Origin: Hormiphora californensis
Lineage: Eukaryota > Animalia > Ctenophora
Assembly (NCBI GenBank): GCA_020137815.1
Contig: CM035351.1
Location: 310,001-374,000 of the forward strand
DNA: 64,000 nucleotides
Reading direction: 5' to 3'
Part shown: positions 34,302 through 49,044 of the stretch, in pieces
How the letters are laid out: each line of letters starts with the position of its first letter
Position numbering within the stretch: the stretch's first letter is position 1
Program-made: the position numbers and the translations under genes
The notes under the pieces: generated by a model
Databases searched by the model: none
Seen by the model: only the letters and a program-made list of their open reading frames with translations
Told to the model about the DNA's origin: nothing

Positions 34302-37300
34302 CTAGCCTACCAGGCTGGACATGATATCTCGAGCATTATTCCGCAAATCTGATGCCTCTCCAATGAGCTCAACTGACGGGGAAAAAATGAAATAATGGAA
34401 AAGAAGAATTGGGGAAGCTTTTGGTACAAGGTGATCAGTAAACGCCCAGTATTAGATTTGTTCACGGGGGTGTTGCCCCCCCCCCCCGGTAGTTTGCTGG
34501 GAAAGACACTTACCCAGGGAGAGATGTTCAATAATCGCTGAGCGAACAGTGCACAGGGGTGGGTAAAGGAGTAGCAACTCGGAGAGTTTGCCACCCTTCT
34601 CCGCGAGGGCCTCTTCCAACTTCTCGCACATCTGCTGTCTGTACTGGGCGACCTTCTCACTCTCATCGTCCAATGTTTCACAGGCTGTGGAATAAGGGGG
34701 TTGTAGGGGGGGTGTCACAGGCTGTGAAATGAGGGGGTTGTAGGGGAGGTGTCCACAGTGCTGTGGACATGTAGGGGGTTGTAGGGGCGGGTGTGTCACA
34801 TGCTGTGGAATAAGGGGGTTGTAAGGGGGGGGGGGTTGTCCACCGGCTGTGGAATACGGGGGTTGGTATGTGGGTGGTCACAGGCTGTGGAATAAGGGGG
34901 TTGTAGGGGCGGGGTGTCACAGGCTGTGGAATAAGGGGGTTGTAGGGGCGGGGATGTCACAGGCTGTGAAAGGTGTCGGGGGAGGAACGATTAGTTCGTT
35001 TAAGGGAAATGGTAAATTGCTTAATCCTGAATCTTTGACATATTGTAATAATTTGTCACCTGCCACGACGTGGGAAAGGAAATGAAAGAATGGGAATTTG
35101 TCGACACGGAGAATATATAAAAAGGATTTTGACAAAGTACTTTGGATATTTCCCCCGAGCATCCCGGTAAATCGAGGTGTGACTGTATGATAGTGAACAA
35201 AGAGAAAGTAGTAGTCAACTCAGTGGTGGCCCCAGCCTGGGGTGGTGGGGGGGTGGCCACCCCCCCAAAACTTTTGAAACAGGGGTTGTTGGGGGTGGTA
35301 AAATAGCTTTAAAATGTGTTCTAAATTGCTTTAAATTGATCAAAATCTAAAATTTTCCGGGGGCTTCGCCCCTAACCCACACCAAGGGCTGAAAATCGTT
35401 AAAATATTGTTCTAAGTTGCTTAAAATTGATCAAAAACTAAAATTTTTCGGGGACTTTGCCCCTTACCCACACCAGAGGCTGAACATCATTAAAAAAGTT
35501 TTCTAAAAGGGCTGAAAATCGATAAAATATTGTTCTAAATTGCTTTAATTCATCAAAATTTCCGGGGGCTTCGCCCCTTGTGACTGAAACTCGTTGAAAA
35601 AGTTTTCTAAAAGGGCTGAAAATTGTTAAAAAAAGGTGTTCTAAATTGCTTAAAATTCATCAAAAACTAAAATTTTCCGGGGGCTTCGCCCCCTAGCCCC
35701 CAACAAGGGCTCTGCCCCTGGACCCCGTTGGGGGGCTGCGCCCCCCAAACCCCCTGCCGCAGCTCCCTCGGCGCCGCTTCGCGGCACCTCGGTCGCGGTC
35801 GGGGTTTGGAGTTGTAGTGTGGCCTTCGGTCACACCACCCCCCAAAAAATCCGTGCTGGGGCCACCCCTGAGTCAACTTACATGGATCAAAGAGTACGAT
35901 GGCCATGAACATGTCGAGTTCTGCGTCAGTGCTAATGAGGTTCTGAAGAGGAGCTACCAACTTATCAAGGATCAACTTGCCAACTTTCTGAACCACCTGG
36001 ACAAGAGAAATACAGGAATATTTAGGGATGAATCAGAATACATCGATATTACGCTGTATAGCTGCAGGTCGCATTGAGGGGTAATTTCAAATCTCAGTCG
36101 ACTAGTTAGTAACTAGTTAGTAACTAGTAGTGGTAACCAGTAGTATTAACTACTAGTTAGTAACTAGTAGTAGTAACTACATAGTAGTGGTAACTAGTAG
36201 TTAGTAACTAGTAGTAGTAACTACATAGTAGTGGTAACTAGTAGTGGTAACTAGTAGTTAGTAACTACTTAGTAACTAGTAGTAGTTACTAAGTAGTAAC
36301 TAGTAGTTAGTAACTAGTAGTTACATTTCTAACTCACTTCACTGGATCCATCTCCAGGGTTAAAACAACTTTTAGTGTTGTCTTGGAGCTGTTTTGCACT
36401 TGCTCGACTCGATTTGAAGGCGAACTTTAGGAGTAGCAGTAGGGTGATAGAGTTAGAGAAGAGGGCCTTTCGGACTTCACCAGATAGAGACTGAAGAGGG
36501 AGTAGTGGGTTACAACTGGACAGAAAAGACGGACAATAACTATAGGGAGAGTCCGGGGGTAACAATTCTAAATACCTGGAAGGGCTCTAAGCTGGAGGCC
36601 CACTGGTGTAGTTCAGTTAGCTGTTTCTTACCGCTCCCAACTATTTTCCCGCTATCGATGTGCGTTATGATAGGCGGGTTGCTGGTGTGGGACATGAACT
36701 GAAAAACAGTGGTTATTTAAAGGAGTGAAAGATATCGTAAACAGAGCAGAGATTAACTCCCTATTATTTGGTGCGACACTCCCTAATATTAACTCCCTAA
36801 TTTGGTGGGACACTCCCTAATATCAACTCCCTAATTTGGTCCTATTATTAACTCCCTAATTTGGTGCGACACTCACCTTTTTAGCACTCACCTCGCTGGA
36901 AACAGAGAACTGCCCGTCAATGTACTCCTCTGGCCATCTAGGCACTAGAGGGTGTACCCGGACTGTCTCAACCTTACCGTCCTCCGTTCGGAGGGTTCTC
37001 AGCTCTGTTCTCTGGGGAGAGGGAGGGTGTAAGGAGGGTTCTCAGCTCTATTCTCTGGGGAGAGAGGGAGGGTGTAAGGAGGGTTCTCAGCTCTGTTCTC
37101 TGGGGAGAGGAAGGGTGTCAGGTGTGAGCTGTGTTCTGAGCTCTGGGGAGGGGAAGGGTGTAAGGAGGGTTTTGAGCTCTGTTCTCTAGGGGGAGGGAGG
37201 GAGAGTGTGAGCTGTTCTCTATAGAGGAAGGGTGTAAGGTGGTGGGAAGGTGGTAGATACACTTCGTTAGAATTGCAAAAGGAAGAAGATAACGAGAGAC

Positions 37301-49044: not shown

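What the first reader, a model, noticed from the sequence alone, without database searches (positions are those of the whole stretch)
34302..49044. Nuclear receptor LBD apparently fused to an ETS/IRF-like winged-helix domain instead of a zinc finger
Seen: seven phase-consistent 3' exons (37432-34302) encode a hinge and NR LBD. Six upstream exons (ATG 49044 to 42236) form an open frame with no stop, ending in a phase-1 donor compatible with the phase-1 acceptor at 37432. No CxxC...CEGCKGFF zinc finger was found. Exons 44024-43867 and 42805-42607 encode LASWVIKRLNNRITGRWTDIATGRFDLEWKETAESWYHQRPRRSCPNDAPHLLHKGLLAAFPNLIETRRETIARQSCVKREFKMP. By eye this follows the ETS pattern (LW.FL..LL..I.W.D..G.F.L...VA..W..RK...LSRALR...Y.F) and the IRF start (L..WL....GL.W.D...F.IPWK). 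Established: the NRs described from the ctenophore Mnemiopsis lack the zinc-finger DNA-binding domain; ETS and IRF are winged helix-turn-helix folds. Inference: these receptors may carry a substitute DNA-binding module, a winged-helix + LBD architecture I do not know to be described. The two ETS recognition-helix arginines are absent (LHKGLL), so specificity would differ.
Basis: partly seen in the sequence, partly recalled or inferred. Interest (0 to 1): 0.9.

Follow-up and report, generated by a model that had tools for sequence, protein, structure and literature searches.

The report
Comb-jelly nuclear receptor with winged-helix domain
This comb-jelly gene joins a hormone-receptor-type ligand-binding domain to a very strongly conserved ETS/IRF-like winged-helix domain, so the "DNA-binding-domain-less" nuclear receptors of ctenophores probably do have a DNA-binding module, just not the usual zinc finger.

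Summary
Thirteen minus-strand exons (ATG 49044 to stop 34302) have canonical AG/GT sites and consistent phases. They give an open 526-codon frame with no C4 zinc finger.

The last seven exons are the orthologue of Mnemiopsis MlNR1, published as a 268-aa receptor without a DNA-binding domain.

The fusion is real in relatives. Intronless, cDNA-length contigs from two other ctenophores, and the 2024 Mnemiopsis gene models, encode the same colinear protein of 510-555 aa. In this genome the linking mini-exon and the five codons before the published start Met differ from those cDNAs only synonymously.

Exons 4-5 encode a ~105-aa core of a ~125-aa folded domain. It is also present in MlNR2 and PpNR1 and is the most constrained part of the protein (0-1.5 non-synonymous against 20-30 synonymous differences).

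AlphaFold2 (pLDDT 87.5) gives helix-strand-strand-helix-helix-strand-strand plus two flanking helices. The top structural matches are almost all IRF and ETS DNA-binding domains (Z 6.9-9.1). Pfam Ets and IRF hits stay below threshold, and the ETS arginine pair is absent.

So this is a new, divergent ETS/IRF-like family fused to a nuclear-receptor LBD. DNA binding is inferred, not shown. No paper describing it was found. No RNA data of this species could be laid.

The parts
48913..49044 (-). Coding exon 1 (ATG at 49044; phase 0 out). Gln/Ser-rich N-terminal region.
   Evidence: tblastn of P0028 (residues 1-49) and P0002 (1-27). GTAATT donor.
47768..47892 (-). Coding exon 2 (phase 0 in, 2 out). 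Low-complexity Ser/Pro/Gln region.
   Evidence: tblastn of P0002 residues 9-67, E 2e-5. AG/GTAAGT sites.
45212..45318 (-). Coding exon 3 (phase 2 in, 1 out). Ends just before the folded domain.
   Evidence: tblastn of P0002 residues 74-111. Splice sites.
43867..44024 (-). Coding exon 4. First half of the ETS/IRF-like winged-helix domain (helix a0, a1, strands b1 and b2).
   Evidence: 93-98% aa identity to Mnemiopsis-type and P0028-type cDNAs with saturated synonymous sites. AF2 model.
42607..42805 (-). Coding exon 5. Second half of the winged-helix domain (a2, putative recognition helix a3 'PNDAPHLLHKGLLAA', wing strands b3 and b4, start of a4). Phase 1 out.
   Evidence: 66/66 aa identical to L006 with 30 synonymous differences. 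phmmer, hhalign and fold evidence.
42236..42277 (-). Coding exon 6. A 42-nt mini-exon (phase 1 in and out) linking the winged helix to the LBD half. It is the last copy of a 65-bp tandem repeat.
   Evidence: The peptide ESIIKNGGVAPS is present in P0002, P0028, L006 and L007, and the codons differ only synonymously. Tandem repeat 42245-42475.
37368..37432 (-). Coding exon 7. Holds 'ESYGN' followed by the Met (37418-37416) that begins the published 268-aa MlNR1.
   Evidence: The five codons before the Met show only synonymous variation among four sequences.
36892..37011 (-). Coding exon 8 (hinge, pre-LBD). An alternative GT donor lies 15 nt downstream, at 36877.
   Evidence: tblastn. Mnemiopsis isoforms with and without 'VRIK' at the same place.
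36576..36698 (-). Coding exon 9 (LBD, helix-3 region '...QLTELHQWASSLEPFQ').
   Evidence: PF00104 is significant on the orthologue P0002.
36338..36490 (-). Coding exon 10 (LBD).
35882..35996 (-). Coding exon 11 (LBD; phase 1 out).
34514..34684 (-). Coding exon 12 (LBD, helices 9-11 region).
34302..34372 (-). Coding exon 13 (C-terminal, AF-2-like helix; TAG stop at 34304-34302).

Best explanation
The interval 49044-34302 (minus strand) is one 13-exon gene. It is the orthologue of Mnemiopsis NR1 and encodes about 526 aa with three parts.
(i) A Gln/Ser/Pro-rich, probably disordered N-terminus (exons 1-3).
(ii) A ~125-aa folded domain of the ETS/IRF winged-helix-turn-helix type, encoded mainly by exons 4-5. 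Its order is a0-a1-b1-b2-a2-a3-b3-b4-a4.
(iii) After a mini-exon linker and a hinge, an HNF4/RXR-like nuclear-receptor ligand-binding domain (exons 7-13).

Shown:
- the gene model;
- the existence of the same fused mRNA in two other ctenophores;
- the presence of the same N-domain in all three described ctenophore receptor types (NR1 long form, NR2, PpNR1);
- its extreme purifying selection;
- its predicted ETS/IRF-like fold;
- the absence of a C4 zinc finger.

Inferred:
- The winged helix is the DNA-binding module that stands in for the zinc finger, so the protein works as a (possibly ligand-regulated) sequence-specific transcription factor.
- Helix a3 (invariant Lys), the a2-a3 turn (invariant Arg-x-Ser) and the b3-b4 wing (invariant Arg) are the likely DNA contacts.
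- Because the ETS Arg-x-x-Arg pair is absent, the target is not expected to be the GGAA core.
- The published 268-aa MlNR1 is the 3' part of this gene: either an internal-promoter short isoform or an incomplete 5' end.

I put the architecture at about 0.93 and the DNA-binding role at about 0.65.
For: Gene model. 13 exons, all AG/GT, phases consistent, no stop. They are colinear with P0002 and P0028.

Fusion is transcribed in relatives.
- P0002, P0016, P0018, P0021 and P0022 are 511-515-aa proteins on contigs of 1.6-3.8 kb. The Mnemiopsis KAL5256511-15 isoforms match them.
- L006 is an 1851-nt contig with a complete 510-aa ORF, and L007 is a second species.
- L009 shows that the same exons are interrupted by an intron in DNA.

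Translation through the junction in this genome. The mini-exon and the 'ESYGN' codons vary only synonymously.

Same domain in the other receptors. MlNR2 and PpNR1 in the supplement of PMC3038971; P0003 and P0004.

Constraint. Exon 5 has 0 non-synonymous against 30 synonymous differences, and exon 4 has 1.5 against 20.5. The LBD exons have pN 0.06-0.18.

Fold.
- AF2 pLDDT 87.5, pTM 0.80.
- Foldseek hits IRF2, IRF4 and IRF3 at probability 1.00, then HSF and ETS.
- VIA-align top 14 are all IRF or ETS: IRF3/7 Z 9.1 with 92 residues aligned at 3.3 A, ELF1 Z 8.3, Spi-B Z 8.2. Generic winged helices score 4.7 or less.
- The sister-family model gives the same result: IRF4 at Foldseek E 7.6e-4 and ETS at Z 8.6.

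Sequence. A PDB profile search returns 18 of 18 ETS domains. Pfam Ets reaches E 2e-4 and IRF E 0.058, both below the cut-offs.

No zinc finger. The LBD is confirmed: PF00104 E 2e-15 on the orthologue, and HNF4/RXR at E 1e-12.
Against: No RNA of this species could be examined. The only listed run holds none of the locus, so the fused transcript is shown only in relatives.

5' RACE in Mnemiopsis gave a 268-aa ORF with a non-coding first exon (PMC3038971). A short LBD-only isoform may therefore also exist.

Sequence similarity to ETS and IRF is sub-threshold. hhalign against this genome's own canonical ETS domains gives only E 0.003-0.11, over the first half of the domain.

The ETS recognition arginines are absent. 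The structures are predictions from a 23-row alignment. VIA Z values of 7-9 lie in the range where the tool warns that a common arrangement is possible. DNA binding has not been tested by anyone, as far as the searched literature shows.
Confidence: 0.75

Rival explanations
1. The winged-helix-like domain is real and fused to the LBD, but it does not bind DNA. It would serve as a protein-protein (for example dimerisation or co-regulator docking), RNA-binding or autoinhibitory module, and the receptor would act like DAX-1/SHP-type co-regulators.
For: The ETS Arg pair is missing and helix a3 reads HLLHKGLLAAF. The Pfam and hhalign signal covers only the first, non-recognition half. Winged helices are known to be used for protein binding (established knowledge). 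Reitzel et al. suggested a co-regulator mode for ctenophore receptors.
Against: The best structural matches are specifically DNA-binding ETS and IRF domains, not generic winged helices. The basic residues that are invariant across both families lie in the a2-a3 turn, in a3 and in the wing, the three elements that ETS and IRF use for DNA (mapping inferred). Near-total amino-acid invariance over saturated synonymous divergence fits a nucleic-acid interface.
Confidence: 0.2
2. In this genome the two halves are separate transcription units: an upstream winged-helix gene (exons 1-6) and an LBD-only NR1 gene starting at the Met in exon 7, as originally published for MlNR1. Fused mRNAs would be peculiar to other species or be read-through products.
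For: Exon 7 has an ATG in a good context (AACATGG). It corresponds exactly to the RACE-defined MlNR1 start. No RNA evidence exists for this species. An old Mnemiopsis model (P0014) ended after exon 4.
Against: The mini-exon has phase 1 in and out and no stop. It is conserved at protein level, as are the five codons upstream of the Met, while third positions vary. That is not expected of a UTR or of a terminal exon. Several independent assemblies in two other species carry the full fusion, with alternative-splice variants.
Confidence: 0.05
3. The upstream open frame is a chance or pseudogenic ORF, and its similarity to ETS/IRF is pareidolia.
For: Single exons give no Pfam hit. The protein-atlas searches gave nothing usable.
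Against: phmmer E 1e-37 to 1e-8 to receptors of other ctenophores; hhalign probability 99.2%, E 1e-19, to a second family; dN far below dS; a confident AF2 fold.
Confidence: 0.01

Closest known systems
Mnemiopsis leidyi MlNR1 (Reitzel et al. 2011, PMC3038971) and the 2024 gene models KAL5256511-15 ('hypothetical protein ACHWQZ_G011680')
   Same: Orthologue. Exons 7-13 match the 268-aa MlNR1 from its first Met to its last residue (76-92% per exon), with the same number of coding exons (seven). The 510-515-aa models share all 13 exons and the N-domain (93-100%).
   Different: The published MlNR1 lacks the whole N-terminal half and was described as having no DNA-binding domain. The database models are unnamed, and the N-domain is unannotated.
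MlNR2 / Bolinopsis LOC134825303 (P0003) and Pleurobrachia PpNR1 (and P0004)
   Same: Same architecture: N-terminal winged-helix-like domain, linker, then an HNF4-like LBD. The domain is 41-46% identical over ~115 aa, with the same invariant residues.
   Different: These are paralogues with different linkers. NR2 is a single-exon gene. [quoted passage not shown]
ETS domain (Pfam PF00178; e.g. ELF1, Spi-B/PU.1, ETV1, Ets-1)
   Same: Same secondary-structure order (a1-b1-b2-a2-a3-b3-b4). VIA Z 6.9-8.6 with 79-95 residues aligned. The a1-b1-b2-a2 sequence pattern is recognisable (hhalign and HMM alignments).
   Different: Below the Pfam cut-off. The recognition-helix motif LSRALRYYY with its two arginines is replaced by HLLHKGLLAAF. 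There are extra conserved helices a0 (W-x3-W) and a4. It is distinct from the five or more canonical ETS genes of the same genome.
IRF DNA-binding domain (Pfam PF00605; IRF2/3/4/7, KSHV vIRFs)
   Same: Best Foldseek and VIA matches for the ctenophore domain (probability 1.00; Z 9.1). A series of conserved Trp residues has partly similar spacing (the 12-residue b1-b2 Trp spacing is identical).
   Different: Pfam reaches only E 0.058, for one paralogue. The long IRF L1 loop is absent. The fifth Trp position is His. It is distinct from the one canonical IRF gene of this genome.
DAX-1 (NR0B1) and SHP (NR0B2), vertebrate nuclear receptors without a zinc-finger DBD
   Same: An NR LBD without the C4 zinc finger.
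   Different: DAX-1 and SHP have repeats or nothing in place of the DBD. Here a folded winged-helix domain takes the N-terminal position.

Membership tests
Nuclear receptor superfamily (ligand-binding domain, PF00104) | Significant match to the Hormone_recep profile or to solved NR LBDs | tested here: met
   Orthologue P0002 (76-92% identical to window exons 7-13): PF00104 E 2.2e-15, 57 bits against a cut-off of 23.5. The profile hits HNF4-alpha and RXR LBDs at E ~1e-12. Single window exons are too short to score.
Nuclear receptor superfamily (canonical architecture) | C4 zinc-finger DNA-binding domain (PF00105; C-x2-C-x13-C-x2-C, P-box CEGCKGFF) | tested here: not met
   No motif in any frame of the 64-kb window. 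No PF00105 match over the cut-off in the 110.7-Mb genome; the best is E 0.4, elsewhere. None in the orthologous full-length cDNAs.
ETS family (PF00178) | Score at or above the Pfam gathering threshold (26.9 bits) | tested here: not met
   The ctenophore receptors give no Ets hit even at E<=10. Sister-family proteins score 15.6-22 bits, E 2e-4 to 0.02. The genome-wide PF00178 scan does not pick up the window.
ETS family (PF00178) | Winged helix-turn-helix topology a1-b1-b2-a2-a3-b3-b4 | tested here: met
   AF2 DSSP order. VIA Z 8.2-8.6 to ELF1, ELF2 and Spi-B with 79-86 residues aligned at 2.6-3.3 A. These are predicted structures only.
ETS family (PF00178) | Two invariant arginines and the Tyr run in recognition helix a3 (LSRALRYYY) that read the GGA core | tested here: not met
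   The a3 helix of the window reads PNDAPHLLHKGLLAAF. The canonical ETS genes of the same genome keep KLSRAMRYYY. The register comes from sequence inspection, not from a residue-level structural alignment.
IRF family (PF00605) | Score at or above the Pfam gathering threshold (27 bits) | tested here: not met
   Only P0003 gives 14.2 bits, E 0.058, over residues 27-70. The genome-wide PF00605 scan finds one canonical IRF gene, not the window.
IRF family (PF00605) | Five spaced tryptophans (Trp pentad) and the IRF-type winged-helix fold | tested here: inconclusive
   Fold: Foldseek probability 1.00 to IRF2/3/4 and VIA Z 9.1 to IRF3/7. Trp: conserved W35, W48, W60 and W67 plus H82 in the numbering of L006:332-748, with only the W48-W60 spacing equal to IRF. 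This is my comparison with the IRF-1 sequence from memory, so it is a lead only.
HSF-type winged helix | Closest structural match | tested here: not met
   HSF1, HSF2 and HSF5 score Z 4.5-5.3, clearly below ETS and IRF.

The most novel reading that the evidence does not exclude
Every ctenophore nuclear receptor is a two-module transcription factor that reads DNA through a lineage-specific ETS/IRF-like winged helix instead of a zinc finger. If so, the NR ligand-binding domain was combined with different DNA-binding modules on the two sides of the ctenophore/other-animal split. The zinc-finger + LBD architecture would then not be the founding state of the superfamily, or it was replaced wholesale in ctenophores. 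The homologous domain found in unnamed non-ctenophore contigs would mark an older, undescribed third branch of the ETS/IRF group of DNA-binding domains.
Probability: 0.5. Interest if true: 0.9.

Novelty: new variant of a known kind. Interest (0 to 1): 0.82.

Why it matters
Since 2011 ctenophore nuclear receptors have been cited as the receptors that "lack a DNA-binding domain". That left two questions open: how they regulate genes, and whether the first nuclear receptor was an LBD alone.

This locus, together with the orthologous cDNAs, shows that the published NR1 is only the 3' half of a larger protein. It also shows that all ctenophore receptor types share a folded ETS/IRF-like domain that is conserved far more tightly than the LBD itself.

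That turns a negative statement into testable hypotheses. One can ask for a defined domain's DNA motif, for its targets in tentacle and apical-organ cells, and for any ligand dependence. It also adds a new domain combination to the nuclear-receptor superfamily, and probably a new branch to the ETS/IRF winged-helix group.

Tried and rejected
- Pfam on single exons: no hits, because the exons are too short.
- PF00104 scan of the genome: nothing, and the control genomes are prokaryotes.
- RNA evidence: the look-up of sequencing runs listed only one run, with no shared words. Read laying on 37300-42900 found no contig on the exons.
The genomic context and the organism of the database proteins could therefore not be fetched.
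- ESM-atlas searches: nothing usable.
- The first PDB profile search (alignment A1) was swamped by the LBD. It was repeated with an N-domain-only alignment.
- The weak match at C6:1648005 (E 0.64) looks like chance.
- A second LBD or a zinc-finger exon hidden in the 4.8-kb intron 6 was rejected. No NR-like open frame or motif is there. It holds a tRNA-Arg gene and repeats.
- I first suspected that exon 6, which lies inside a tandem repeat, was spurious. That was rejected when its peptide turned up in the cDNAs of two species.
- The N-domain exons of the second receptor gene of this genome (contig 13) were sought and not found.
- The organism of the sister family could not be named.
Exons were searched one by one by reference. 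The fold used the orthologous cDNA contig L006:332-748, whose domain core is 98-100% identical to exons 4-5.
- Concatenation was done only inside one local script, to count phases and stops. Nothing of it was printed or saved.
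Full report
**Organism**

The window is G000:C2:310001-374000 of a 110.7-Mb, 45-contig assembly. 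Earlier notes of this scan call the genome a ctenophore.
- The size and contig number fit Hormiphora californensis (110 Mb, 44 scaffolds; PMC8527503).
- The LBD exons of a second receptor gene on contig 13 are identical in amino acids to the published Pleurobrachia pileus PpNR1.
- I therefore say only that it is a pleurobrachiid-type cydippid.

**Observation**

I read the minus strand and fixed the boundaries by script. This gives 13 exons, from ATG 49044 to TAG 34304-34302.
- All internal boundaries are AG/GT with pyrimidine tracts.
- Phases are consistent.
- The frame is open over 526 codons.
- No C4 zinc-finger motif occurs in any frame of the window.
- No PF00105 match over the cut-off occurs in the genome.
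- The concatenation was made only inside that script to count phases and stops. All searches were done exon by exon, by reference.

**What the 3' half is**

The supplement of Reitzel et al. 2011 (PMC3038971) gives MlNR1 as 268 aa. It begins MVSYRRRSDIYSVDDEK and ends ...RNNARDMMTNLLG.
- Exons 7-13 encode the same protein from the Met at 37418-37416 to the stop, at 76-92% identity per exon.
- The number of coding exons is the same, seven.
- Profiles containing these LBDs hit HNF4-alpha and RXR LBDs at E ~1e-12.
- The orthologue passes PF00104 at E 2e-15.

**Whether the halves are one gene**

A phmmer search of 1.84 billion representatives with exon 5 alone returned P0002, a 515-aa protein on a 1613-nt Logan contig.
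- Its cluster holds five isoforms of Mnemiopsis leidyi gene ACHWQZ_G011680 (KAL5256511-15, 447-515 aa).
- It also holds further 511-515-aa proteins on contigs of 1.9-3.8 kb.
- P0028 (551 aa) and seven cluster mates represent a second species.

A scan of JGI metagenome contigs returned four loci.
- L006 is 1851 nt with a complete 510-aa ORF.
- L007 is 2413 nt and of the P0028 type.
- L008 is cut at its 5' end at 'ESYGN-MVSY'.
- L009 is a DNA contig in which exons 4 and 5 are separated by an intron.

A full ORF on contigs this short can only come from spliced RNA, because the same coding sequence spans 14.7 kb here. The contigs also differ by the alternative-donor variant (with or without VRIK), as the annotated isoforms do.

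All of these read ...QQVAAIL-ESIIKNGGVAPS-ESYGN-MVSYRRR... This is exon 5, then the 42-nt mini-exon, then exon 7. Both proteins lie colinearly on all 13 window exons.

For this genome itself there is no RNA. The one listed run shares no words with the stretch and laid nothing on the exons. The indirect evidence is strong, however. Between the window, L006, L007 and L008, the mini-exon and the five codons that precede the 'MVSY' Met differ only at synonymous third positions (TCG/TCT/TCC/TCA, TAT/TAC, GGG/GGA/GGT). That is the signature of translated sequence, not of a 5' UTR.

The RACE result of 2011 (a non-coding first exon and a 156-nt UTR) suggests that an internal promoter may also give an LBD-only isoform. 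The two products are not exclusive.

**What the N-domain is**

The peptide of exons 4-5 also opens MlNR2 and PpNR1, their relatives P0003 (Bolinopsis) and P0004, and the NR1 long forms. It is therefore common to every ctenophore receptor type known.

It is the most constrained part of the protein.

| Region compared with L006 | Non-synonymous differences | Synonymous differences |
|---|---|---|
| Exon 5 (66 codons) | 0 | 30 |
| Exon 4 | 1.5 | 20.5 |
| LBD exons | pN 0.06-0.18 | saturated |

Synonymous sites are saturated throughout (pS 0.65-1.0).

A second, unnamed family (P0005, P0007, P0008, P0029-P0067) is homologous to it.
- These are first exons on ENA, JGI and Logan contigs of up to 10.5 Mb. 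The organism is unknown.
- phmmer from exon 5 alone gives 8e-5 to 2.5e-4 in the whole library.
- hhalign gives probability 99.2%, E 1e-19, over 107 columns.
- It is not found in this genome.

**Fold**

| AlphaFold2 target | Mean pLDDT | pTM |
|---|---|---|
| Ctenophore domain (L006:332-748, 139 aa, 23-row alignment) | 87.5 | 0.80 |
| Sister-family protein P0029 | 81.4 | 0.70 |

Elements of the ctenophore model: a0 10-20, a1 32-42, b1 46-50, b2 55-59, a2 60-68, a3 77-91, b3 96-102, b4 108-114, a4 117-134. The P0029 model has the same order of elements.

Structural searches for the ctenophore domain:
- Foldseek against the PDB gives IRF2, IRF4 and IRF3 (probability 1.00, TM 0.47-0.66 on the target), then HSF/Skn7, Spi-B, ETV6 and PU.1.
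- VIA-align against 48,161 representative chains puts only IRF and ETS domains in the top 14: IRF3/7 Z 9.1 (92 residues, 3.3 A), ELF1 Z 8.3, ELF2 Z 8.2, Spi-B Z 8.2.
- Below them come IBP39, PU.1 and HSF. Generic winged helices score 4.7 or less.

Structural searches for P0029:
- Foldseek gives IRF4 at E 7.6e-4, then IRF2 and PU.1.
- The VIA top 15 are all ETS or IRF, Z 6.1-8.6.

The tool warns that Z 7-8 alone can be a common arrangement. Here the matches are family-specific, cover the whole core, and agree between two models and two programs.

**Sequence-level membership**

- A profile of the domain against all PDB sequences returns 18 hits at E<10. All are ETS domains, none individually significant (best 0.27). 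They are aligned over a1-b1-b2-a2.
- Pfam gives Ets at 15.6-22 bits for the sister family and IRF at 14.2 bits for P0003. All are below the gathering cut-offs.
- The genome has at least five canonical ETS genes and one IRF gene.
- hhalign of the N-domain profiles against the genome's own ETS profile gives only E 0.003 and 0.11, again over the first half.
- The ETS recognition motif KLSRAMRYYY is replaced by HLLHKGLLAAF.

The domain is therefore not a member of the ETS or IRF family as curated. It is a divergent relative, or at least a structural analogue, of that winged-helix group.

**Mechanism (inferred)**

The residues invariant in both families include the hydrophobic and Trp core. They also include three basic or polar surface positions: Arg-x-Ser in the a2-a3 turn, Lys in a3, and Arg in b4. 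ETS and IRF domains use these same three elements to hold DNA (established knowledge). I could not obtain a residue-level structural superposition, so this mapping is inference.

The most likely reading is that the winged helix binds DNA, the Gln-rich N-terminus and the LBD recruit co-regulators, and specificity differs from GGAA. The main rival, at about 0.2, is a non-DNA role for the domain.

**Literature**

Full-text searches for ctenophore or Mnemiopsis nuclear receptors combined with winged helix, ETS, IRF, AlphaFold or DBD/LBD found no description of this domain.
- The 2011 paper states that the amino-terminal regions contain no conserved domain similar to other transcription factors.
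- Later papers use MlNR1 and MlNR2 without revisiting this.
- The 2025 Mnemiopsis genome paper mentions neither nuclear receptors nor IRF or ETS.
- The library does not cover subscription journals, so prior description cannot be excluded.

**Verdict**

The architecture (ETS/IRF-like winged helix + NR LBD) is real and appears to be undescribed. The DNA-binding function is a well-founded inference awaiting a simple experiment.

Noticed in passing
window 41981-42053 (-): A tRNA-Arg(ACG) gene (ARAGORN; Rfam RF00005, 55.7 bits) lies inside the 4.8-kb intron 6 of the receptor gene, on the same strand.
   Followed up: partly
window 42245-42475 (-), with exon 6 at 42277-42236: A 65-bp tandem repeat (3.6 copies, 97% alike) duplicates the acceptor site and most of the coding part of the mini-exon. 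The three upstream copies read ESIIKNG(G/D)VAP and then hit a TAA with no donor. Only the last copy has the GTAAGG donor. Relative to the other species, this genome's exon 6 has two extra codons (Gly-Lys) before the donor.
   Followed up: partly
window 36877-36892 (-): A second GT donor lies 15 nt downstream of the exon 8 donor and would add five residues (VSAKK). Mnemiopsis isoforms differ at the same place by four residues (VRIK), so this looks like a conserved alternative 5' splice site.
   Followed up: partly
G000:C13:4959835-4964322 (-) (loci L010-L024): A second nuclear-receptor gene. Its LBD exons are identical in amino acids to the published Pleurobrachia pileus PpNR1. The N-domain exons that PpNR1 cDNA carries were not found within 72 kb upstream or anywhere in the assembly, whether by protein, profile or a back-translated GRFELEW pattern. 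The possible reasons are an assembly gap, tiny exons, or limits of the search.
   Followed up: partly
proteins P0005, P0007, P0008, P0029-P0067 (no locus available): A family of at least 20 clusters carries a homologous ETS-like domain. It is encoded as a first exon on unannotated ENA, JGI and Logan contigs of up to 10.5 Mb. The exons are followed by TG-rich introns. The organism and the rest of the protein are unknown, and the family is absent from this genome.
   Followed up: partly
protein P0014 (MetaClust UPI0004EA2177) and PMC3038971: Older Mnemiopsis annotation split this gene. One model stops after exon 4 by reading into the intron. The published MlNR1 starts at exon 7. That split explains why the N-domain of NR1 went unnoticed.
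   Followed up: yes
window 45322-48550: Introns 1-3 are packed with long GA/TC microsatellites and a 67-bp tandem repeat (47543-47760). These produce the many spurious 'SLSLSL'/'RERERE' open frames in the ORF list.
   Followed up: no
window 42109-42226: A 31-bp tandem repeat (3.7 copies) lies directly downstream of the exon 6 donor, between it and the tRNA gene.
   Followed up: no
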